Assembly: GCA_048772705.1 (NCBI GenBank)
Contig: JBLWGC010000124.1
Location: 1 to 7,324, forward strand
Origin: Leidyana gryllorum EB-2025a
Taxonomy: Eukaryota; Protista; Apicomplexa
Reading direction: 5' to 3'
Length of the DNA stretch: 7,324 nt
In this document: positions 48 to 7,324 of the stretch, one piece after another
Numbering within the stretch: the stretch's first letter is position 1
Layout of the letters: each line of letters begins with the position of its first letter
Notes under the pieces: generated by a model
Told to the model about the DNA's origin: nothing
Database searches by the model: none
The model's input: only the letters and a program-made list of their open reading frames with translations
Position numbers and translations under genes: made by a program

Positions 48-53
48 CGAGCA

Positions 54-117
54 GTCCTAGTAAAGCTTGCTGAACCGTATGTGAAGCCATTGGCCGCAAA
101 ATGCCAAGTTGGACAAC
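54..117 (+). repeat. Conserved Ser 5' flank of about 64 bp; further copies at 1394-1458, 3916-3980 and 7193-7256
   Basis: All four copies share GAACCGTATGTGA and variants of GGCCGCAAAATGCC. Confidence 0.9.
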
Positions 118-199
118 GGCAACTCGCCCGAGTGGTTAAGGGGGTAGACTAGAAATCTACTGGGCCGGGCCCGTGCTGGTTCAAATCCAGCAGTTGTCG
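118..199 (+). tRNA. tRNA-Ser(AGA)
   Basis: 82 nt; acceptor GGCAACT/AGTTGTC, G73; anticodon arm GTAGA-CT-AGA-AA-TCTAC; long variable arm; GGTTCAAATCC. Confidence 0.95.
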
Positions 200-274
200 T
201 GCGATGTGGTTGGAGGGTTAAACACCAACTCACGCTTGAATTTCTGAATGGTGGAAAAGCAACCATGTGTCATC

Positions 275-345
275 TGCATCTGCCGGGAATCGAACCCGGG
301 TCGTCTCGATGGCAACGAGACATTCTACCACTAGACCACAGATGC
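275..345 (-). tRNA. tRNA-Gly(GCC)
   Basis: 71 nt; GCATCTG/CAGATGC, A73; TCTCG-TT-GCC-AT-CGAGA; CCGGG-TTCGATT-CCCGG. Confidence 0.96.
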
Positions 346-410
346 GTGACACCTTGTTGTTGAAGCTCGTACACGGTAACGGCCGTTTTCTGAACGAATG
401 GAATGTCCGT

Positions 411-472
411 GGCGTGTTCATAGTGGTTACTATTTTCGCATGTCACGCGTAAGAAGCGGGCCGATTGCCGGT
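411..472 (+). pseudogene. tRNA-Asp(GTC) remnant
   Basis: TAGTGGTTACTATTTTCGCATGTCACGCGTAAGA aligns to Asp 782-853; 5' acceptor strand deleted and T arm decayed. Confidence 0.8.
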
Positions 473-500
473 AAATGAGTCTGGAACGGGGGATGGTTTT

Positions 501-572
501 GGGCCTATGGGGCAACGGTAGCGCGTCTGACTCCAGATCAGAAGGTTGGGTGTTCGAATCACTCTGGGCTCA
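501..572 (+). tRNA. tRNA-Trp(CCA)
   Basis: 72 nt; GGGCCTA/TGGGCTC; TCTGA-CT-CCA-GA-TCAGA; one D-stem mismatch (GGGC/GCGC). Confidence 0.9.
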
Positions 573-585
573 ACCGGACTCTATG

Positions 586-590
586 TTTTT
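586..590 (+). terminator. Candidate Pol III oligo-T terminator (T5) after Trp
   Basis: TTTTT starting 14 nt after the discriminator. Confidence 0.5.
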
Positions 591-608
591 CCCGTTTGGG
601 GCGCAGCC

Positions 609-688
609 TGACATAAGTGGGATTCGAACCCACGACCTTTCGGACTCCGGTCTGAGCACAGCGCCTCAGACCACTCGGTCATCTTGCC
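609..688 (-). tRNA. tRNA-Leu(CAG), possibly decaying
   Basis: 80 nt; CTGTG-CT-CAG-AC-CGGAG with a G:G mismatch; A5:A68 acceptor mismatch relative to Leu 6007-6086. Confidence 0.75.
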
Positions 689-781
689 GGGATGTTGTTG
701 GCTCGCCGCTCCACGCGTTTTCTATCCCTGGATCTCAAGATGGAAGGACTTTTGGGGTTTCAGGCCGGTGTGTTCGGAGCG

Positions 782-853
782 TCCGAGATAGTATAGTGGT
801 TAGTATTTCCGCCTGTCACGCGGAAGACCCGGGTTCGATTCCCGGTCTCGGAG
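782..853 (+). tRNA. tRNA-Asp(GTC)
   Basis: 72 nt; TCCGAGA/TCTCGGA, G73; TCCGC-CT-GTC-AC-GCGGA; intact A and B boxes. Confidence 0.97.
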
Positions 854-879
854 CACAGTTGATCTCGCTTAAGATTGTC

Positions 880-885
880 TTTTTT
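880..885 (+). terminator. Candidate Pol III oligo-T terminator (T6) after Asp
   Basis: TTTTTT starting 27 nt downstream of Asp. Confidence 0.5.
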
Positions 886-908
886 GGTGCCCGCTGAAAG
901 TTGCAAGC

Positions 909-981
909 TACAGCCACCGAGGATCGAACTCGGGACCTTCTGCGTGTTAAGCAGACGTCGTAACCACTAGACCATGGCTGC
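909..981 (-). tRNA. tRNA-Val(AAC)
   Basis: 73 nt; GCAGCCA/TGGCTGT, A73; TCTGC-TT-AAC-AC-GCAGA; CCGAG-TTCGATC-CTCGG. Confidence 0.95.
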
Positions 982-1041
982 ATGGATGGTCCCCGCAGCC
1001 CAAGAGAAGTGGCGAAGCTTCAGGGAGTAGTGAGGACCAGT

Positions 1042-1110
1042 TCATCGCGCCGGGATCGAACCCAGGTCGGAAATCCAAAGTGTCGAGTGCTAACCACCAA
1101 GGACGCAACC
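1042..1110 (-). pseudogene. tRNA-Gln remnant (loop reads TTG)
   Basis: Aligns to Gln 3073-3144 including both flanks; D stem, anticodon stem and 3' acceptor are disrupted. Confidence 0.85.
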
Positions 1111-1267
1111 GGTTCAGCCCATCCCAGAAGAGTCGGACTAGCGCTTCCTCAACTGGACACATGCAACACGGGTCTTGTATACAGACCCCAGCGTAAAGAG
1201 TTGGATTCGAGTCGGGCAAAAACCTCAGTTCAATCATTCAACCAGTTGCGCTCTCCCCGAATGCTAC

Positions 1268-1349
1268 CGACAAGGGTGAGATTCGAACTCACGCGGGTGG
1301 AACCCAACGGCTTAGCAGGCCGCCGCCTTAACCACTCGGCCACCTTGCC
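1268..1349 (-). tRNA. tRNA-Ser(GCT)
   Basis: 82 nt; GGCAAGG/CCTTGTC, G73; GCGGC-CT-GCT-AA-GCCGT; long variable arm. Confidence 0.95.
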
Positions 1350-1458
1350 GACGACATCTCCTACTCGCTGGCACTTTTTAACAACGGTTTGGGGTCCTAG
1401 TCAAGCTTGCCGAACCGTATGTGACATCACTGGCCGCAAAATGCCGAGTTCGACAGGT

Positions 1459-1540
1459 GGCAACTTGCCCGAGTGGTTAAGGGGGTAGACTCGAAATCTA
1501 CCGGGCCTGGCCCGCGCTGGTTCAAATCCAGCAGTTGTCG
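1459..1540 (+). tRNA. tRNA-Ser(CGA)
   Basis: 82 nt; body nearly identical to the Ser(AGA) copies; GTAGA-CT-CGA-AA-TCTAC. Confidence 0.95.
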
Positions 1541-1604
1541 TGCGATGTGGTGGAAATGATGCAATTCCCAGCATCAAAAACTCATATGGGTCGAGACAAG
1601 GAAT

Positions 1605-1676
1605 GCCTCCTTAGCTTAGGGGCAGAGCATTCGCTTTGTAAGCGAAAGGTCGCTGGTTCGATTCCGGCAGGAGGCT
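1605..1676 (+). tRNA. tRNA-Thr(TGT)
   Basis: 72 nt; GCCTCCT/AGGAGGC; TTCGC-TT-TGT-AA-GCGAA. Confidence 0.95.
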
Positions 1677-1699
1677 TCAGTCATTAGCCTAAACATGGT

Positions 1700-1759
1700 T
1701 GCGATCATCGGCCCGCATTTTCGGACGGCGGCTTGCACGCAGCACTCGGCCATCTTGCC
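1700..1759 (-). pseudogene. tRNA-Leu remnant
   Basis: Minus strand GGCAAGATGGCCGAGTG...GTCCGAAAA; internal deletion, T arm lost; lies in the same Leu-Asp cassette as 609-853. Confidence 0.8.
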
Positions 1760-1836
1760 GAAGTGTTACCCGTTTCCTGTCCGTGAAATTCAAAATGCGA
1801 GGAGTTCTGGGGTTGGAGGCCGGCGTGTTTATAGCG

Positions 1837-1908
1837 TCCGAGATAGTATAGTGATTAGTATTTCCGCCTGTCACTCGGAAGACCCGTGTTCGATTCCCGG
1901 TCTCGGAG
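1837..1908 (+). pseudogene. tRNA-Asp(GTC), full length but probably non-functional
   Basis: Three substitutions versus 782-853: D-loop GG>GA, anticodon-stem C:T and T-stem T:C mismatches. Confidence 0.75.
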
Positions 1909-1953
1909 CAGTTCCAGCCCCTCACAACTGCTGCAACTCAGGTTTTGTCTCAG

Positions 1954-2005
1954 CTGGTCTGGACTTCATCCGGCATTGTAAGAGTGGGAGCCGCATATAG
2001 AAGCC
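1954..2005 (-). pseudogene. tRNA-Glu remnant
   Basis: GGACTTCATCCGG...GTGGGAGCCGCATATAGAAGCC aligns to Glu 2407-2479; followed by a Pro remnant, same order as 2407-2632. Confidence 0.65.
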
Positions 2006-2046
2006 GACCTTGGAGAGACGTGGCATTGAGTCAACAACTATCAAAC

Positions 2047-2116
2047 GGGCTGTTCTGGGAATCGAACCCAGGACTTCTTCCACCAAAGGAAGAATACATA
2101 ACTGGACCAAACAGAG
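2047..2116 (-). pseudogene. tRNA-Pro(TGG) pseudogene
   Basis: 3' half identical to Pro 2561-2632; 6-nt anticodon loop TT-TGG-T; D-loop GG lost; 5' acceptor end altered. Confidence 0.85.
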
Positions 2117-2131
2117 CGCTGTGGGTGCGTC

Positions 2132-2204
2132 AGGTACTGGCAGGTTCCAAACCTGCGACTTCGTGGCTAAGAGACTTACACTCTGATGGCTGAGCTACGA
2201 GGCT
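2132..2204 (-). pseudogene. tRNA-Asn-derived pseudogene (loop reads CTT)
   Basis: Aligns to Asn 5686-5758; D loop, anticodon stem and TTC motif are mutated. Confidence 0.8.
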
Positions 2205-2258
2205 CAGCTACGATGATTTGAGTTGCGATAAGCTTGCAGGTACCCATTCGATGCAGTC

Positions 2259-2330
2259 AGCCTTCTGCCGGAATCGAACCGGCGACCTTTCGCTTACTAA
2301 GCGAATGCTCTGCCCCTAAGCTAAGAAGGC
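2259..2330 (-). tRNA. tRNA-Thr(AGT)
   Basis: 72 nt; GCCTTCT/AGAAGGC; TTCGC-TT-AGT-AA-GCGAA; GCCGG-TTCGATT-CCGGC. Confidence 0.96.
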
Positions 2331-2406
2331 AATGCAAGCCAAAGATCACGAATCAGTCACTATTGACGGGGATTTCTGAGGCACTTTGCTCGAATGGTTC
2401 AATGAC

Positions 2407-2479
2407 TTCCACTGCCGGGACTTGAACCCAGATCGTGCGGGTGAGAGCCGCATATCCTAGCCACTTAGACTACAGTGGA
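2407..2479 (-). tRNA. tRNA-Glu(CTC)
   Basis: 73 nt; TCCACTG/CAGTGGA; TGCGG-CT-CTC-AC-CCGCA. Confidence 0.94.
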
Positions 2480-2560
2480 CAACTTCCTCAGCTGCAGCTT
2501 TAGCCGAGAGCCGTACCCTCTTGATCTGAGATAGAGCGTCGGGTCAACCGACAAGCAACG

Positions 2561-2632
2561 GGGCTGTTCTGGGAATCGAACCCAGGACTTCTTCCACCCG
2601 AAGGAAGAATCATACCACTAGACCAAACAGCC
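2561..2632 (-). tRNA. tRNA-Pro(CGG)
   Basis: 72 nt; GGCTGTT/AACAGCC, C73; CTTCC-TT-CGG-GT-GGAAG. Confidence 0.96.
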
Positions 2633-2721
2633 GCCTGTCGGTCGTGCAACGCGGTGAGCACAGTCGCGAGAGTGGTCATACGATGTTGAGAATCAACAAA
2701 ATGCGACGGGGTCTGCACAAA

Positions 2722-2794
2722 GGGCGACTAGCTCAAATGGTAGAGCGCTCGCTTAGCATGCGAGAGGTACTGGGATCGATGCCCAGGTCGTCCA
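2722..2794 (+). tRNA. tRNA-Ala(AGC)
   Basis: 73 nt; G3:U70 identity pair; CTCGC-TT-AGC-AT-GCGAG; eukaryotic Ala-type GATCG T loop. Confidence 0.96.
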
Positions 2795-2818
2795 CACTTC
2801 GTAGTCTGCAAGTGCCGC

Positions 2819-2824
2819 TTTTTT
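2819..2824 (+). terminator. Candidate Pol III oligo-T terminator (T6) after Ala
   Basis: TTTTTT starting 25 nt downstream of Ala. Confidence 0.5.
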
Positions 2825-3072
2825 ACTACAGAGTTGAAAGCTTTCAAGTGTGCCCTTTACCCCTTGGCTAGACTCGGGCACCGCAGTATGTGTGAAGGTT
2901 GCCTCAGAGCCCGGATTTCCGAGTTTGCATTTTACAATCACACACTCTGCCGACGAAGATACCAGAGTCAGTTACAATATTTCAAAGGTCAGTAGAGAGA
3001 CGCGTGTTGCATGTGTCCAGTTGGGAACGCTAGCCCGGATGATTCTACCGACTCTTTTGGATGGGCTGAACC

Positions 3073-3144
3073 GGTTGCGTGGTGTAGTGGTTAGCACTGG
3101 AGACTCTGAATCTCCCGACCTGGGTTCGATTCCCGGCGCGACCT
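3073..3144 (+). tRNA. tRNA-Gln(CTG)
   Basis: 72 nt; GGTTGCG/CGCGACC, U73; GGAGA-CT-CTG-AA-TCTCC. Confidence 0.95.
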
Positions 3145-3195
3145 TGGAACTGGTCCTCACTACTCCCTGAAACTTCGCCATCTCTTGCCATTCGT

Positions 3196-3222
3196 GCAGC
3201 CACGATCTAGTGGTCTCGACGT
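3196..3222 (+). pseudogene. tRNA-Val 5' fragment
   Basis: GCAGCCACGATCTAGTGGTCTCGACGT versus Val GCAGCCATGGTCTAGTGGTTACGACGT, in the syntenic position after Gln. Confidence 0.75.
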
Positions 3223-3286
3223 ACACGACCGTTTTACTTCAAATGAGAAGATAGAATCGAGTTGAGCGAGTGTGAGGGGCAGTTCT

Positions 3287-3358
3287 GGGTACGTAGCTCA
3301 GTGGTAGAGCAGCTGACTGCAGATCAGCAGGCTCGTGGTTCAACTCCGCGCGTGCCCT
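3287..3358 (+). tRNA. tRNA-Cys(GCA)
   Basis: 72 nt; GGGTACG/CGTGCCC, U73; GCTGA-CT-GCA-GA-TCAGC. Confidence 0.94.
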
Positions 3359-3427
3359 GGAGATGGGCTAAAACGCTCGAAGTTGTTGGTCCAACATTCC
3401 TGACCACAATGCAATGAGTCTGGACCG

Positions 3428-3490
3428 GGGCCTATGGCGGAACGTAGCGGGTCTGACTGCAGCTTAGAAAATTGGGGGTTCGAATCACTC
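3428..3490 (+). pseudogene. tRNA-Trp-derived pseudogene (loop reads GCA)
   Basis: Aligns to Trp 501-572 and shares the upstream AATGAGTCTGGA; 3' acceptor strand lost. Confidence 0.85.
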
Positions 3491-3527
3491 AATTTGATCT
3501 CATGATCTTCCCGTATGGGGGGCAACC

Positions 3528-3588
3528 TGAGAAGAGTGGGATTCGGGCCGACGCCCTTCCCGTACTGCGCCGTCTACAGCTTCTTGCC
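3528..3588 (-). pseudogene. tRNA-Leu remnant
   Basis: TGAGAAGAGTGGGATTCG...TCTTGCC aligns to both ends of Leu; D arm deleted; syntenic with Trp-Leu 501-688. Confidence 0.8.
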
Positions 3589-3671
3589 AGTGTCTGAATG
3601 GCTCTGTGATGTTTGATTCTAACTCAGGGGGATCCAGCATCCGGGTCGGTGCCATCTGTCGTCGCAGAAGT

Positions 3672-3745
3672 GGTCGCGTAGCTCAGTCGGTTAGAGCGTG
3701 AGCCTAATAAGCTCAAGGTCCCCGGTTCGAGCCCGGGCGTGACCA
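3672..3745 (+). tRNA. tRNA-Ile(AAT)
   Basis: 74 nt; GGTCGCG/CGTGACC, A73; TGAGC-CT-AAT-AA-GCTCA. Confidence 0.96.
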
Positions 3746-3845
3746 AGTGAGTAGATCTCTGATAAATAGTTGTCCTGGACCCGATGAAGCCTCAACATTC
3801 TGCGACCAATACGAAAGGAACTAGTTACTAAGTCCGAGCTTCCTT

Positions 3846-3909
3846 GCCGCTCCAGCTCCGTCGGTAGACCCCTAAATTTCTAATGGAGAGACCGCAGCTT
3901 CGGGCAGCG
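3846..3909 (+). pseudogene. tRNA remnant, Lys-like
   Basis: GCCGCTC-CAGCTCCGTCGGTAGA (A-box-like) ... CTTCG-GGCAGCG; same T-arm deletion as 1-47. Confidence 0.55.
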
Positions 3910-3980
3910 CCAGCAGTCCGAGTCAAGCTTGCTGAACCGTATGTGAAGCCACAGGGCGCAAGATGCCAAGTCCGACAGGT

Positions 3981-4062
3981 GGCAACTTGCCCGAGTGGTT
4001 AAGGGGGTAGACTAGAAATCTACTGGGCCTGGCCCGCGCTGGTTCAAATCCAGCAGTTGTCG
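3981..4062 (+). tRNA. tRNA-Ser(AGA)
   Basis: 82 nt; GTAGA-CT-AGA-AA-TCTAC; stems intact. Confidence 0.96.
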
Positions 4063-4144
4063 TGCGATCTGATTGGAGGGACAGACAACAACTCACTCCT
4101 GAAACCCCAGAATGGTGCCTCAATCAACCATCTGCCATCTTCTC

Positions 4145-4215
4145 TGCATCTGCCGGGAATCGAACCTGGGTCGTCTCGGTGACAACGACACAGTCTACCA
4201 CTAAACCACAGATGC
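4145..4215 (-). pseudogene. tRNA-Gly body with GTC (Asp) anticodon, probably decaying
   Basis: Paralogue of Gly 275-345 with flanks; TGTCG-TT-GTC-AC-CGAGA with a G:G mismatch; T-stem A:C mismatch. Confidence 0.8.
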
Positions 4216-4339
4216 GTGACATCTCCATTCCTGAATACAAAGCGAAGGGTCTTAAAACTAGTCCAGGCCGTCCAACTTAGGCCGATACATAAAAACCAGG
4301 CTCATCGGATACGTGGTTCCAGAGACACACGCTCTTTTC

Positions 4340-4417
4340 GCAGTCCGGAAGCTATCTAGTGGTCACGACGTCTGTTTAACACGCAGAAGGTCCCGAGTTC
4401 CATCCTCGGTGGCTGTA
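4340..4417 (+). pseudogene. tRNA-Val(AAC) pseudogene
   Basis: 3' two-thirds match Val 909-981; 5' acceptor/D strand disrupted by an insertion; T loop TTCC rather than TTCG. Confidence 0.85.
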
Positions 4418-4469
4418 ACACGCATCGTTCAGGTGAGCATCACGAAATCTAGAGAGGAAGACGATCTAT

Positions 4470-4541
4470 CTCCGAGACCGGAAATCGAACCCGGGTCTTC
4501 CGCGTGACAGGCGGAAATGCTAACCACTATACTATCTCGGA
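4470..4541 (-). tRNA. tRNA-Asp(GTC), two substitutions
   Basis: 72 nt; differs from 782-853 by a D-stem T>C and C61>T in the B box. Confidence 0.82.
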
Positions 4542-4632
4542 CGCTCTGAACACGCCGGCCTCCAATCCCAGAAGTCTTTCTATTTTGGCTCACGGACAAA
4601 AAACGCATGGAGCGATGAACCAACAACACTGT

Positions 4633-4694
4633 GGCAAGATGGCCGAGATGTCTGAGGCGCTGTGCTCAGACCGCAGTCCGAAAGGGCGAGGATC
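4633..4694 (+). pseudogene. tRNA-Leu(CAG), 3'-truncated
   Basis: GGCAAGATGGCCGAG...CTGTG-CT-CAG-AC-CGCAG-TCCGAAAGGGCG; D-loop GG lost; no T loop or 3' acceptor. Confidence 0.85.
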
Positions 4695-4733
4695 TCGGGT
4701 TGAGCCTTTCGGACCCCCGGAGCAGTTGGACGG

Positions 4734-4813
4734 CCGGGGGTTGCTCAGTTGGTAGAGCATCTGACTGTAGTGCTGGCATCAGATAGTCGGCGGTTCGATT
4801 CCGTCCCACCGGA
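4734..4813 (+). tRNA. tRNA-Tyr(GTA) with a 7-nt intron at 4771-4777
   Basis: C1:G72, A73; TCTGA-CT-GTA-G-[TGCTGGC]-A-TCAGA; 73 nt after splicing; one acceptor G:A mismatch and T at position 9. Confidence 0.85.
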
Positions 4814-4895
4814 AGTAGAGTGGTGATTGGCAAAGTACTAGACAGCGTTGATAGGCCAACCAGACTACTCTGGCGAGGGTTCCATCTATGTAGTT

Positions 4896-4967
4896 CGGAT
4901 GGGCTGAGAATCGATCCCGGAACCTTTCGCATACCAAGCACCGTTTCATCATCTGGGCTAGCCTCCC
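4896..4967 (-). pseudogene. tRNA-Ala remnant
   Basis: Minus strand GGGAGGCTAGCCCAGATG...ATGCGAAAGGTTCCGGGATCGAT...TCC; divergent from Pro, as in 2561-2794. Confidence 0.75.
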
Positions 4968-5056
4968 TCTGTGCCTACCTCATGGCATTGAGTGATACTC
5001 CACATAGTGAGACGAGTCTCTCGACTGTACCCAGCGGGTTGAACCACCGGCTAGGC

Positions 5057-5128
5057 GGCTGTTTGGTCTAGTGGTATGATCCTTCCTTAGGGTGGAAGGA
5101 GTCCTGGGTTCGATTCCCAGAACAGCCC
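5057..5128 (+). tRNA. tRNA-Pro(AGG)
   Basis: 72 nt; GGCTGTT/AACAGCC; CTTCC-TT-AGG-GT-GGAAG. Confidence 0.95.
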
Positions 5129-5262
5129 TCTTAAATGTCGGTTGACCCGATGGGATAAGCAGGTTTTAGAAGTAACACAGCCACCTCGTTACCACTTCGG
5201 CACTCAAGGCAATTAACATCTCAAAAATCGCATTTCGGCTCCCTCTTCCATGGTGCAGACTG

Positions 5263-5334
5263 AGCAGTGTAGCTCAGTGGAAGAGTGTTGGGCTCATAAC
5301 CCAAAGGTCCGTCGATCGAAACGACGCACTGCTA
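5263..5334 (+). tRNA. Initiator tRNA-Met(CAT)
   Basis: A1:U72; three consecutive G:C pairs in the anticodon stem (TTGGG-CT-CAT-AA-CCCAA); A54/A60 (GATCGAAA). Confidence 0.96.
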
Positions 5335-5383
5335 AGTGTGCGCAGGAGGGAAACAGTTACAGAATTGACTGGGTCGTGAGCAA

Positions 5384-5447
5384 AGCCTTCTGCCGGAATC
5401 GAGCCGGCGCTTACGAAGCGAACGCTCTGCCCCTAAGCTTAGAAGGC
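5384..5447 (-). pseudogene. tRNA-Thr(CGT) pseudogene with an 8-nt deletion
   Basis: 64 nt; lacks ACCTTTCG relative to Thr 2259-2330, removing the 3' anticodon stem and variable loop. Confidence 0.9.
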
Positions 5448-5497
5448 AATGTAAGTCGGAGATAACATGGAGCACTTTGCTCGAGTACTTCAATGAC

Positions 5498-5570
5498 TTC
5501 CACTGCCGGGACTTGAACCCGGATCGTGCGGGTGAGAGCCGCATATCCTAGCCACTTAGACTACAGTGGA
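5498..5570 (-). tRNA. tRNA-Glu(CTC)
   Basis: 73 nt; one difference from 2407-2479; stems intact. Confidence 0.96.
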
Positions 5571-5685
5571 CAACTCCCTCAGCCGCAGCTTTAGCCGAGA
5601 GCCGTACCCTCTTGACAAGACGTGGTTGCAATCCTGCGGTACAAAAAGGAGGATGTCTATACTAACCTGTGAACCATTGTAGCTG

Positions 5686-5758
5686 GGCCTTGTAGCTCAG
5701 TCGGCAGAGCGTGTGGCTGTTAACCACAAAGTCGCAGGTTCGAAACCCGCCAGGACCG
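5686..5758 (+). tRNA. tRNA-Asn(GTT)
   Basis: 73 nt; TGTGG-CT-GTT-AA-CCACA; G73; C3:A70 and one T-stem A:C mismatch. Confidence 0.85.
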
Positions 5759-5802
5759 GTTTCAGAGGCACACTAAACACTGACTGCGCTGCTCTCCCAA
5801 TG

Positions 5803-5860
5803 GCACTTGTGGTCTGCGACTCTTCAAAGATGTAAGTTTGTTTGGATCCCGCCACGTGCA
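5803..5860 (+). pseudogene. tRNA-Gly(CCC)-type remnant
   Basis: 5' GCACTTGTGGTC and 3' TCCCGCCACGTGCA-GCCG match the ends of Gly 6461-6531; interior is lost. Confidence 0.7.
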
Positions 5861-5873
5861 GCCGTATGTACTT

Positions 5874-5946
5874 TGGACGACCTCGGTATCGATCCCAGTA
5901 CCTCTCGCATGCGAAGCGAGCGCACTACCATCTGAGCTAGCCGCCC
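5874..5946 (-). tRNA. tRNA-Ala(CGC)
   Basis: 73 nt; G3:U70; CTCGC-TT-CGC-AT-GCGAG; one D-stem and one T-stem mismatch. Confidence 0.85.
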
Positions 5947-6006
5947 ATGCGCTCTACATGGAAGACCTATTGCATCCAGTGGCTGACCGAGGGCCGATAA
6001 AACGGC

Positions 6007-6086
6007 TGACAAGAGTGGGATTCGAACCCACGCCCTTTCGGACTGCGGCCTTAACACAGCGCCTTGGACCACTCGGCCATCTTGCC
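6007..6086 (-). tRNA. tRNA-Leu(AAG)
   Basis: 80 nt; GGCAAGA/TCTTGTC, A73; CTGTG-TT-AAG-GC-CGCAG; T4 on the minus strand at 5999-6002. Confidence 0.96.
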
Positions 6087-6159
6087 GGAGTGTTCTTGGC
6101 TCGCCACTTTACACGTTTTCTGTTCGTGAAGTCTCGAGAAGAAAGGCTTTTCTCACGGG

Positions 6160-6236
6160 CCGGGGTGCTTAGATGGCAACCCATCTGATGGTAGTGGTGG
6201 CATCAGCTATTCGACGAGGAAATTCCGTCCGCCGGG
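6160..6236 (+). pseudogene. tRNA-Tyr pseudogene retaining the 7-nt intron (6195-6201)
   Basis: CATCTGATGGTAG-TGGTGGC-ATCAG aligns to Tyr 4734-4813; D and T loops destroyed. Confidence 0.8.
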
Positions 6237-6313
6237 AGTTGAGGAGTGGACTTCTTACAACGCATTCCATCCTGATCGATGCTTCGCTACCTCTACAGCC
6301 TCGCTCAAAGATT

Positions 6314-6385
6314 GTCCGAGTCGTCTAGTGGTTAGGACAGCACGTTGTGGCCGTGCAAACCCAGGCTCGATTCCTGGCTCGGACA
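6314..6385 (+). tRNA. tRNA-His(GTG)
   Basis: 72 nt; GTCCGAG/CTCGGAC, A73; GCACG-TT-GTG-GC-CGTGC; C at position 54; no encoded G-1. Confidence 0.9.
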
Positions 6386-6460
6386 AGCAGTCTAAAGTGC
6401 ATTGCTCTTCGCCCCGGTTGAAAATATTGTTGCAGCCATGGTCAAGCCTGTACGATCGGC

Positions 6461-6531
6461 TGCACCTGCCGGGACTCGAACCCGGGCTGCTCGCATGGGA
6501 AGCTCGCATCCTACCCTTGGACCACAAGTGC
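6461..6531 (-). tRNA. tRNA-Gly(CCC) with a defective anticodon stem
   Basis: 71 nt; GCACTTG/CAGGTGC, A73; CGAGC-TT-CCC-AT-GCGAG has two purine mismatches. Confidence 0.75.
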
Positions 6532-6596
6532 ACTCGAGAAAGAGCTCCAGCACCCCGAGACTCGGCCGCAGTCTGCGTTGAGCTAGTGGGTGCCTC

Positions 6597-6668
6597 AAGT
6601 ACTGGCAGGTTCCAGTCTGCGACTTTGTGGCTAAGAGACTTACCCTCTGGTGGCTGAACTACGAGGCT
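6597..6668 (-). pseudogene. tRNA-Asn-derived pseudogene
   Basis: Sister of 2132-2204 with shared lesions (GTAAGTCTCTTAGCCAC on the minus strand). Confidence 0.8.
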
Positions 6669-6729
6669 CGGCTAAGATGATTGGAGCTTGAGAGACTTAA
6701 GCTTTGCAGGTGCCCAGTCGATGTAGTCA

Positions 6730-6801
6730 AGCCTTCTGCCGGAATCGAACCGGCGACTTCTCGATTACGAAGCGAACGCTCTGCCCCTAAACTAAGAAGG
6801 C
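6730..6801 (-). tRNA. tRNA-Thr(CGT)
   Basis: 72 nt; TTCGC-TT-CGT-AA-TCGAG with a C31:T39 mismatch; acceptor and T stems intact. Confidence 0.82.
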
Positions 6802-6877
6802 AATGGAAGCCGGAGATGACGAAACAATCGCTATTGACGGAGATTAGTGGAGCACTTTGCTAGAGTAGTTCAATGAC

Positions 6878-6950
6878 TTCCACTGCCGGGACTTGAACCC
6901 GGATCGTGGGGGTGAAAGCCGCATATCCTAGCCACTTAGACTACAGTGGA
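6878..6950 (-). tRNA. tRNA-Glu(TTC)
   Basis: 73 nt; two differences from Glu 5498-5570: wobble base and a C:C anticodon-stem mismatch. Confidence 0.85.
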
Positions 6951-7121
6951 CGAGTGGTTGAGTTGGGGCTTCGGCCGAGAGCCGTACAGTCTTGGAAAAC
7001 ATGGTATGTCGGCGTGATCAAGTGAGGTGGATCTCTGATACAGATTCGGACTTAGTAACCAATTCCATTTGTATTGATCGTGGAATCTTGGGCCTTCCTC
7101 GGGTACGGGGCGAGCTTTCTT

Positions 7122-7186
7122 GCCGCCCCAACTCCTTTCCTTTGCGCGCAAGACTTTTGAAGGGAGATCCGCGGGTTTGGGCGGCG
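7122..7186 (+). pseudogene. tRNA remnant, Lys-like
   Basis: GCCGCCC...GCGCAAGACTTTTGAAGGGAGA...GGCGGCG; closely similar to 1-47. Confidence 0.5.
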
Positions 7187-7256
7187 CGAGCAGTCCTAGT
7201 AAAGCTCGCTGAACCGTATGTGAAGCCACTGGCCGCAAAATGCCAAGTTCGACAGC

Positions 7257-7324
7257 GGCAACTTGCCCGAGTGATTAAGGGTTAGACTTGAAATCTATTG
7301 GGTCTGGCCCGCGGTGGTTCGAAT
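7257..7324 (+). tRNA. tRNA-Ser(TGA), cut by the window end, possibly decaying
   Basis: Same body and upstream flank as the other Ser(NGA) genes; TAGA-CT-TGA-AA-TCTA; D-loop GG>GA and a 1-nt deletion. Confidence 0.75.

What the first reader, a model, noticed from the sequence alone, without database searches (positions are those of the whole stretch)
118..7324. Isoacceptor sets generated by wobble-base switching within duplicated cassettes
Seen: paralogues with homologous flanks differ at anticodon position 34. Ser AGA (118, 3981), CGA (1459), TGA (7257). Thr AGT (2259), CGT (5384, 6730). Glu CTC (2407, 5498), TTC (6878). Pro CGG (2561), AGG (5057), TGG (psi 2047). Leu CAG (609), AAG (6007). 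Gln CTG (3073), TTG (psi 1042). Ser 1459 and 3981 differ at only two positions, one being base 34. Amino-acid-changing switches appear only in damaged copies. Inference: so many changes at one base among near-identical genes point to selection for synonymous anticodon recruitment, or to gene conversion that homogenises bodies but spares base 34.
Basis: partly seen in the sequence, partly recalled or inferred. Interest (0 to 1): 0.8.

Follow-up and report, generated by a model that had tools for sequence, protein, structure and literature searches.

The report
Same tRNA genes, different wobble base
In this parasite's huge scrambled field of tRNA genes, the genes that read synonymous codons are often the same gene apart from the first anticodon base and sit in related flanks; this comes from a few old single-base switches copied hundreds of times, a known kind of tRNA evolution, not from a hot spot at that base.

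Summary
Paralogues in the window share flanks far above chance (44-56 of 60 flank bases matched; null 99th percentile about 38).

In 282 kb of this genome (1,108 ARAGORN tRNA genes), the commonest wobble-masked body is shared by Ser AGA/CGA/TGA, Glu CTC/TTC, Lys CTT/TTT, Val AAC/CAC/TAC, Leu AAG/CAG and Pro CGG/TGG. A common body is also shared by Gln CTG/TTG and Ala CGC/TGC.

- The wobble base is inherited with the cassette. The nearest neighbour by flanks has the same base in 85-100% of genes.
- Among recent copies, base 34 changes about 2.3 times as often as flank sites, base 35 nearly as often. The excess is the same in single-anticodon families, where the change cannot yield another normal tRNA of the set.
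- Several apparent switches are gene-conversion patches that carry base 34 together with linked body markers, so conversion does not spare it.
- A relative with unrelated spacers already has the same Ser bodies.

Best reading: a few old isoacceptor anticodon shifts on duplicated cassettes, then mass copying and recombination. This is a known kind of event (Rogers and Griffiths-Jones 2014; Yona 2013). First readers noted the same idea on two other pieces of this genome.

The parts
118..199 (+). tRNA-Ser AGA; 3 differences from the family's commonest body
53..117 (+). Upstream flank of Ser-AGA, homologous to the flanks at 1394-1458, 3916-3980 and 7192-7256
   Evidence: families D2, D3; 49-56 of 60 matched
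1459..1540 (+). tRNA-Ser CGA; differs from Ser 3981 at base 34 and one variable-arm base; sits in the CGA-type cassette found in dozens of near-identical copies
3981..4062 (+). tRNA-Ser AGA, identical to the commonest Ser body; its downstream flank is of the type usual for Ser-TGA
7257..7324 (+). tRNA-Ser TGA, cut by the contig end, decayed (89.9% to the commonest body), in an AGA-type upstream flank
2259..2523 (-). Two-gene cassette: Glu-CTC (2407-2479) then Thr-AGT (2259-2330) with a 76-nt spacer
   Evidence: D1
6730..6994 (-). Paralogous cassette: Glu-TTC (6878-6950) then Thr-CGT (6730-6801); 86% identical to 2259-2523; both genes differ at base 34, and Thr also at its CGT-class body markers (positions 26, 43, 45 in the numbering)
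5384..5570 (-). Cassette of Glu-CTC (5498-5570) and a Thr-CGT pseudogene with an internal deletion (5384-5447); this pseudogene cassette is itself multi-copy
1605..1676 (+). tRNA-Thr TGT with its own body markers (positions 6, 51, 68 in the numbering) and flanks unrelated to the other Thr genes
2561..2632 (-). tRNA-Pro CGG, the commonest body, shared genome-wide with Pro-TGG
5057..5128 (+). tRNA-Pro AGG; differs from CGG at base 34 and a compensating anticodon-stem pair; upstream flank 44 of 60 matched
   Evidence: (I3)
2047..2116 (-). Pro-TGG pseudogene; one base missing in the anticodon loop and a damaged 5' end
609..688 (-). tRNA-Leu CAG of a second body type (10 of 80 positions differ from Leu-AAG; G:G mismatch in the anticodon stem; Rfam 29.2 bits)
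6007..6086 (-). tRNA-Leu AAG, the commonest body, shared elsewhere in the genome with Leu-CAG and nearly with Leu-TAG
3073..3144 (+). tRNA-Gln CTG, identical to the intact Gln-TTG body apart from base 34
1042..1111 (-). Gln-TTG pseudogene (11 body differences); a member of a pseudogene lineage with at least 15 copies; flanks homologous to those of Gln 3073
2722..2794 (+). tRNA-Ala AGC with its own body type (markers at positions 6, 15, 60 in the numbering)
5874..5946 (-). tRNA-Ala CGC with the TGC/CGC body type; no flank homology to Ala 2722
4145..4215 (-). Gly-GCC body whose anticodon reads GTC (change at base 35), with 5 other body changes
2133..2201 (-). Decayed Asn-like body whose anticodon reads CTT (Lys); second copy at 6599-6665
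   Evidence: (I9, D9)

Best explanation
The window is one whole contig of a genome-wide, scrambled field of eukaryote-type tRNA genes. The field is built from short cassettes: one or two genes with about 50-100 nt of flank, each copied tens to hundreds of times.

For several amino acids and codon boxes, the isoacceptor genes are one and the same gene apart from the wobble base, and sit in flanks that are homologous but 15-30% diverged. They are paralogues that parted once or a few times per box, by duplication of a cassette plus a change at base 34 (an isoacceptor anticodon shift). This happened before the burst of copying, while selection held the rest of the body.

The 'many changes at one base' are those few old differences copied many times. 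They were then reshuffled by crossing-over and gene conversion between cassettes, which moves base 34 together with any linked body markers. Among recent copies the anticodon mutates like any other site.

Shown: shared bodies, flank homology, inheritance of the wobble base with flanks, near-neutral recent rates, conversion patches.

Inferred: that the founding events were point changes rather than old conversions, and when they happened.
For: Shared bodies. The commonest wobble-masked body is shared by Ser (AGA 9, CGA 18, TGA 4), Glu (TTC 16, CTC 12), Lys (CTT 4, TTT 5), Val (AAC 18, CAC 5, TAC 1), Leu (AAG 4, CAG 3) and Pro (CGG 8, TGG 3). For Gln (TTG 3, CTG 3) and Ala (TGC 7, CGC 2) the second commonest body is shared.

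Flank homology between anticodon classes is above the null: Ser AGA/CGA upstream median 0.83, Leu AAG/CAG 0.75, Gln downstream 0.80, Val 0.75, against a null 99th percentile of 0.63-0.64. Window pairs reach 44-56 of 60.

The wobble base follows the flanks. Nearest-neighbour agreement is 0.85-1.00 against 0.35-0.60 by chance. Fitch steps on flank-only trees are far below shuffled labels: Ser 13 against 39.9, Thr 14 against 59.2, Gln 4 against 17.6. 149 clusters holding 589 genes need 20 changes at base 34.

Recent rates per cluster-column: flank 0.0234, body 0.0225, base 34 0.053, base 35 0.045. In single-anticodon families base 34 is also 0.053.

Body markers. Thr, Gly CCC/TCC and Arg ACG/TCG markers are fully linked to the wobble base; those of Pro-AGG and Ala-AGC are linked apart from a few mosaic copies.

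Conversion patches in identical flanks carry base 34 plus markers.

A relative (metagenome loci L058 and L065) has the same bodies: Gly 71/71, Ser-CGA 82/84, Ser-TGA 83/84. The one spacer I tested, from L058, has no match anywhere in this genome.
Against: - With identical bodies, a point change at base 34 cannot be told from a short conversion tract taken from a pre-existing isoacceptor gene. The founding mechanism is therefore inferred.
- Body polymorphisms are shared across anticodon classes (Leu position 20, Gln position 60, Val position 20, in the numbering). This shows later exchange between the classes.
- The relative shows that Ser CGA/TGA body identity is older than the present spacers. 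The flank homology may therefore post-date the origin of the isoacceptors.
- I hold only 282 kb of an estimated 2 Mb of array. 23 of the 3-kb pieces were picked by a Ser-CGA query and are biased.
- No outgroup with matching flanks was available to give the direction of change.
Confidence: 0.62

Rival explanations
1. Concerted evolution. The isoacceptor genes are old. Frequent gene conversion and crossing-over among the thousands of arrayed copies erases body differences and spreads flanks. Selection for a complete decoding set keeps base 34 polymorphic, along with a few co-adapted sites in Thr, Pro and Ala.
For: - Conversion patches within identical flanks are seen directly in Thr and Ala; in one Thr case a deleted Thr-CGT pseudogene cassette holds a full-length AGT body; Leu and Glu show marker-carrying switches of the same kind.
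- Polymorphisms are shared across anticodon classes.
- Ser CGA/TGA bodies are the same in a relative whose tested spacer has no match in this genome.
- In another organism (L061), adjacent Ser-CGA and Ser-TGA genes are much less alike than here (each matches this genome's Ser body at only 67-69 of 83-84 positions), so body identity is not universal.
Against: - The tracts seen include base 34 rather than sparing it. My search for them was conditioned on a base-34 difference, which weakens this point.
- In Thr, none of 124 genes has both flanking markers converted with base 34 kept.
- Thr, Pro-AGG, Ala-AGC, Gly and Arg classes keep fixed body differences, so homogenisation is not general.
- Purifying selection alone can keep tRNA bodies identical.
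Confidence: 0.25
2. An ongoing process aimed at base 34: either a mutational hot spot or recurrent positive selection that recruits copies to a synonymous anticodon.
For: - Base 34 has the most Fitch steps of any body column on flank trees in 7 of 12 families.
- It shows a 2.3-3.2-fold excess among recent copies.
- Clean single-base cases exist: Ser CGA to AGA in a CGA cassette, Pro CGG/TGG, Val AAC to TAC.
Against: - The excess is the same in single-anticodon families, where the change gives an anticodon outside the normal set. Examples are a Trp body with ACA (3 copies), Ile TAT to CAT, and Asp GTC to CTC.
- Base 35 changes nearly as often (6 against 7), and one other column (position 41) ties base 34.
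- Most base-34 events come with several other body differences, and at least Thr and Leu carry the partner class's markers, so they are conversions. Clean synonymous switches number 1-3 in about 133 clusters, at or below the flank rate.
- High-frequency sites collect extra steps on imperfect trees; in Thr and Pro a linked marker column has almost as many steps (13 against 14, 21 against 22).
Confidence: 0.06
3. Artefact: chance similarity of short flanks, mis-called anticodons, or a mis-assembled repeat.
For: The contig is short (7,324 bases), it is an entire contig, and the region is highly repetitive.
Against: - Two independent tRNA finders agree.
- The same cassettes recur at 97-100% identity on more than 20 contigs.
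- Flank matches are far above the cross-family null.
- An independent metagenome holds similar dense arrays from a relative.
Confidence: 0.02

Closest known systems
Isoacceptor anticodon shifts found through flank synteny (Rogers and Griffiths-Jones 2014, RNA 20:269, PMC3923123)
   Same: Same logic and same kind of event: tRNA genes with homologous flanks whose anticodons differ but code the same amino acid. That paper found 44 isoacceptor shifts, 39 of them at the first anticodon base. [quoted passage not shown] Here Ser, Glu, Gln, Lys, Val, Leu and Pro CGG/TGG have no covarying change. Thr and Pro-AGG covary at mid-molecule and variable-loop sites (positions 26 and 43-45 in my numbering).
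   Different: There the comparison is between orthologues in related species, and the shifts are scattered single genes. Here the comparison is between paralogous cassettes inside one genome. It covers most multi-anticodon boxes at once, and each version has since been amplified tens to hundreds of times. The direction of change could not be set for lack of an outgroup with matching flanks.
Anticodon switching (Yona et al. 2013, eLife 2:e01339, PMC3868979)
   Same: A tRNA gene whose body is as close or closer to a gene with another anticodon than to genes with its own. It was reported in 58 of 68 eukaryotes, mostly through the first anticodon base. The commonest bodies here meet that definition for Ser, Glu, Lys, Val, Leu and Pro.
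   Different: Yona and colleagues tie switching to changed translational demand and show it by experimental evolution. Here I see no sign of recent demand-driven switching: recent changes at base 34 look neutral.
Arrayed tRNA genes of Entamoeba under concerted evolution (Tawari et al. 2008, PMC2652664)
   Same: [quoted passage not shown] Concerted evolution is invoked there for the spread of variant units.
   Different: Entamoeba has 25 orderly tandem array units with short tandem repeats between genes. Here the cassettes are scrambled on both strands, many copies are decayed, and isoacceptors share bodies and flanks. The passages of that paper I read (a term search for isoacceptor, anticodon and gene conversion) say nothing about wobble-only differences between array units.

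Membership tests
Isoacceptor anticodon shift / anticodon switching | Genes with homologous flanks carry different anticodons | tested here: met
   Window pairs match at 44-56 of 60 flank bases against a null 99th percentile of about 38. Genome-wide medians between classes are 0.70-0.83.
Isoacceptor anticodon shift / anticodon switching | The difference is in the first anticodon base and keeps the amino acid | tested here: met
   The shared body differs at base 34 only in Ser, Glu, Gln, Lys, Val, Leu AAG/CAG, Pro CGG/TGG and Ala CGC/TGC.
Isoacceptor anticodon shift / anticodon switching | The body is as close or closer to a gene with another anticodon than to genes with the same anticodon | tested here: met
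   the single commonest wobble-masked body is shared by two or three anticodons in six families.
Isoacceptor anticodon shift / anticodon switching | The derived state is shown against an orthologue in a related species | tested here: inconclusive
   The only relative found (L058, L065) has the same bodies, and the one spacer tested (from L058) does not match this genome. No orthologous flank is available and no direction can be given.
Concerted evolution by gene conversion in a gene array | Conversion tracts: identical flanks with a patch of the body replaced by another paralogue's sequence | tested here: met
   In Thr, AGT and CGT bodies (markers at 26, 34, 43, 45) sit in the same 60+60 nt flanks, and a full-length AGT body sits in the deleted-CGT pseudogene cassette. 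Ala TGC/AGC likewise.
Concerted evolution by gene conversion in a gene array | Paralogues within a genome are more alike than orthologues between species | tested here: inconclusive
   the bodies in the relative are almost the same as here, so there is no contrast to measure.
Mutational hot spot or positive selection at base 34 | Independent changes at base 34 clearly exceed neutral sites and bases 35 and 36 | tested here: not met
   Rates are 0.053 at base 34, 0.023 in flanks and 0.045 at base 35. Most base-34 events come with other body differences.
Mutational hot spot or positive selection at base 34 | The excess is limited to families where the change is synonymous | tested here: not met
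   single-anticodon families show the same rate, 5 events in 95 clusters (0.053).

The most novel reading that the evidence does not exclude
This lineage runs a 'one body per codon box' tRNA system. In at least six or seven amino-acid families the A34, C34 and U34 isoacceptors are literally the same molecule apart from the wobble base. That state would be kept by conversion among thousands of arrayed copies plus selection on base 34 alone. Charging and wobble-base modification would then have to tell the isoacceptors apart by the anticodon only. The supply for synonymous codons could be re-tuned by a single-base change or a conversion in any copy. That would be the most extreme natural case of anticodon switching. 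It would be unusual for Lys and Glu, whose C34 and U34 tRNAs differ clearly in the well-studied eukaryotes (from my own knowledge, not tested here).
Probability: 0.3. Interest if true: 0.55.

Novelty: new member of a known kind. Interest (0 to 1): 0.38.

Why it matters
Isoacceptor anticodon shifts are known as scattered events between species. Here most multi-anticodon boxes of one genome show the end state at once, with the flank evidence still readable, inside a tRNA field of about ten thousand copies.

That makes the genome a natural data set for two measurements. One is how tRNA genes mutate when they are redundant: among recent copies, bodies change as fast as flanks. The other is how gene conversion moves anticodons between cassettes.

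It does not reveal a new mechanism.

Tried and rejected
The census rests on 282 kb in total, and 23 of the 3-kb loci are biased towards Ser-CGA cassettes.
No read-level or expression evidence was obtained. The local aggregate statistics, run on files already held, include that gene family.
- The look-up of sequencing runs: only small shares (0.10 or less), no RNA holder, nothing usable.
- Metagenome scan with a Ser anticodon-arm pattern: 31 of 34 loci are AT-rich Ser-TGA genes of unrelated organisms. Only L058, L065 and L061 were informative.
- First multiple alignments misplaced the Pro anticodon and let cross-family chimeras into Ala, Val and Asn. I redid them by projection on family references. 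The conclusions did not change.
- A hot spot at base 34: rejected.
- CpG decay as the source of C34/T34 pairs: considered. Only Pro CGG/TGG among the recent clean events fits it, and Glu, Gln and Lys C/T pairs are not at CpG.
- I did not check the organism's identity. 'Gregarine-like' comes from earlier notes of this scan.

Full report
WHAT IS THERE

The window is the whole of contig C124 of a 15.5-Mb assembly in 237 contigs. ARAGORN finds 31 tRNA genes in 7,324 bases on both strands. Rfam finds 32. A BLAST census with this genome's own commonest tRNA sequences finds 44 tRNA-related loci, about a dozen of them decayed.

The anticodon set is eukaryotic. It has A34 for Ser, Thr, Pro, Ala, Val, Leu and Ile, and the Tyr gene has a 7-nt intron. 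Earlier notes of this scan call the organism a gregarine-like apicomplexan with about ten thousand arrayed tRNA copies. I did not test the taxonomy. I can confirm the density: 806 ARAGORN genes in 196,311 bases of unselected sequence, and about 11,600 rough Rfam candidates genome-wide.

THE OBSERVATION

Every anticodon and coordinate in the finding is correct. Ser 1459 and Ser 3981 differ at 2 of 82 positions, one of them base 34.

Flank homology is real. Flanks of genes from different families match at no more than about 38 of 60 bases at the 99th percentile.
- Ser: 49-56 of 60 upstream.
- Thr AGT/CGT: 48 upstream, 46 downstream.
- Glu CTC/TTC: 47-48 downstream.
- Pro CGG/AGG: 44 upstream.
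- Leu: 46 upstream.
- Gln: 45 and 47.

The two-gene cassette Glu-Thr at 2259-2523 recurs at 6730-6994 with 86% identity, and both anticodons differ at base 34.

Small corrections:
- Leu 609 and Leu 6007 differ at 10 of 80 positions.
- Thr-TGT, and the Ala pair, share no flanks with their partners in this window.

GENOME-WIDE PICTURE

In that sample the commonest wobble-masked body is shared between anticodons in six families:
- Ser: AGA 9, CGA 18, TGA 4.
- Glu: TTC 16, CTC 12.
- Lys: CTT 4, TTT 5.
- Val: AAC 18, CAC 5, TAC 1.
- Leu: AAG 4, CAG 3.
- Pro: CGG 8, TGG 3.

For Gln (TTG 3, CTG 3) and Ala (TGC 7, CGC 2) the second commonest body is shared.

Other classes keep their own body markers: Thr AGT, CGT and TGT, Pro-AGG, Ala-AGC, Gly CCC/TCC and Arg ACG/TCG. 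In Thr, Gly and Arg those markers are completely linked to the wobble base. In Pro and Ala they are linked apart from a few mosaic copies.

Flanks of different anticodon classes are homologous in Ser, Thr AGT/CGT, Glu, Leu, Gln, Val, Gly CCC/TCC and Ala CGC/TGC. They are not homologous for Arg ACG/TCG or Thr-TGT.

IS BASE 34 CHANGING OFTEN?

No. The wobble base is inherited with the cassette.
- The nearest neighbour by flanks has the same wobble base in 85-100% of genes, against 35-60% by chance.
- On trees built from flanks alone, base 34 needs far fewer steps than shuffled labels: Ser 13 against 39.9, Thr 14 against 59.2, Gln 4 against 17.6.
- 149 clusters with both flanks at least 90% alike hold 589 genes and need 20 changes at base 34.

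To compare with neutral sites without circularity, I defined clusters by the distal flanks only and counted changes in the inner 40+40 flank bases and the body.

Site class | Multi-isoacceptor families | Single-anticodon families
Flank | 0.0234 | 0.0255
Body | 0.0225 | 0.0174
Base 34 | 0.053 (7 in 132) | 0.053 (5 in 95)
Base 35 | 0.045 (6 in 132) | 0.032 (3 in 95)
Base 36 | 0.015 | 0.021

Values are changes per cluster-column.

So base 34 is about 2.3 times the flank rate (P about 0.04). It is not distinct from base 35. The excess is equally present where the change gives an anticodon outside the normal set.

Looking at the events one by one, most come with several other body differences. For Thr and Leu these are the partner class's own markers. 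Clean synonymous single-base switches are rare: Ser CGA to AGA inside a CGA cassette, Pro CGG/TGG, and Val AAC to TAC.

Clean amino-acid-changing events in otherwise intact bodies also occur. Examples are a Trp body with ACA in 3 copies, Thr TGT to TCT in 3 copies, Thr CGT to CAT, Gly GCC to GTC, and Ile TAT to CAT.

GENE CONVERSION

In Thr, three AGT and three CGT genes sit in the same 60+60 nt flanks and differ by the whole marker patch 26-45. A full-length AGT body sits in a cassette whose other copies carry the deleted CGT pseudogene. Ala TGC/AGC shows the same pattern.

Conversion is therefore active between isoacceptor genes, and the tracts I saw carry base 34 along. In Thr, none of 124 genes has both flanking markers converted with base 34 kept. 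My search for tracts was conditioned on a difference at base 34, so 'never spares' is not proven.

Polymorphisms shared across anticodon classes (Leu position 20, Gln position 60, Val position 20, in the numbering) confirm exchange between the classes.

A RELATIVE

A metagenome scan with a Ser anticodon-arm pattern gave two GC-rich contigs, L058 and L065, with 4 and 6 tRNA genes in 1.2-1.4 kb. Their bodies match this genome's commonest ones: Gly 71/71, Met 71/72, Asp 71/72, Asn 72/73, Ser-CGA 82/84, Ser-TGA 83/84.

The match stops at the gene ends. A 451-base spacer from L058 has no match anywhere in this assembly. Ser CGA and Ser TGA there differ by base 34 and one other base. So body identity of these isoacceptors is older than the present spacers.

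A third contig, L061, comes from a different organism. Its adjacent Ser-CGA and Ser-TGA genes are much less alike than the Ser genes here: each matches this genome's Ser body at only 67-69 of 83-84 positions. Identity of isoacceptor bodies is therefore not universal.

READING

Best: a few old isoacceptor anticodon shifts on duplicated cassettes, with the rest of each body held by selection. A burst of copying and continuing recombination and conversion then multiplied and reshuffled them.

The main rival is concerted evolution with selection on base 34. I cannot exclude it, and it may act alongside the best reading.

A hot spot or ongoing adaptive recruitment is not supported.

KNOWN RELATIVES OF THE IDEA

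- Rogers and Griffiths-Jones 2014 used flank synteny to find 44 isoacceptor shifts, 39 of them at the first anticodon base.
- Yona et al. 2013 found anticodon switching in 58 of 68 eukaryotes.
- Entamoeba keeps its tRNA genes in arrays under concerted evolution.

The present case is a new and unusually complete example inside one mega-array, not a new kind of thing. Two first-reader notes on other pieces of this genome made the same suggestion.

LIMITS

- The sample is 282 kb, part of it biased.
- No outgroup with matching flanks was available.
- There are no expression data.
I worked beside them and sent none of those letters to any search tool afterwards.

Noticed in passing
genome sample (contigs C217, C174, C61:1-20000, C124): Among recent cassette copies the tRNA bodies change as fast as the inner flanks (0.0225 against 0.0234 per cluster-column in multi-isoacceptor families; 0.0174 against 0.0255 in single-anticodon families). 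Most copies therefore show little or no purifying selection since the amplification.
   Followed up: partly
window 2133-2201 (-) and 6599-6665 (-): A decayed Asn-like body whose anticodon reads CTT (Lys). It lies just downstream of the Thr gene in the Glu-Thr cassette. 11 Asn-like bodies with CTT are in the sample. This is an amplified lineage with a changed amino-acid anticodon that neither tRNA finder calls.
   Followed up: partly
L058 and L065 (metagenome Ga0116230): Contigs of a related organism with dense scrambled tRNA arrays, nearly the same tRNA bodies, decayed copies of Glu and Thr, and a fixed difference in the Met gene. The spacer tested, from L058, is absent from this genome.
   Followed up: partly
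L061 (JACCDW010649718.1): A 1.3-kb contig of another organism (41% GC) with five tRNA genes. Three of them (Arg-TCG, Ser-CGA, Ser-TGA) lie within 340 bases, and the Arg and Asn calls are 88 and 91 nt long, which may mean introns.
   Followed up: no
genome sample, Ala, Val and Asn families: Bodies assigned to one family carry anticodons of another with two-base differences: Ala-like with AAC or AGT, and Val-like with CGC (5 copies each). They look like chimeras made by recombination between different tRNA genes.
   Followed up: no
window 609-688 (-): The abundant second body type of Leu-CAG has a G:G mismatch in the anticodon stem and scores only 29.2 bits in Rfam, against a gathering score of 29. 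Yet the sample holds well over a dozen copies of this body type. It may be an amplified pseudogene.
   Followed up: no
window 4734-4813 (+): tRNA-Tyr GTA with a 7-nt intron after the anticodon, as expected for a eukaryote.
   Followed up: no
window 1042-1111 (-): This Gln-TTG pseudogene type is the commonest Gln-like sequence in the sample (15 identical wobble-masked copies). A dead gene has been amplified more than the live ones.
   Followed up: no
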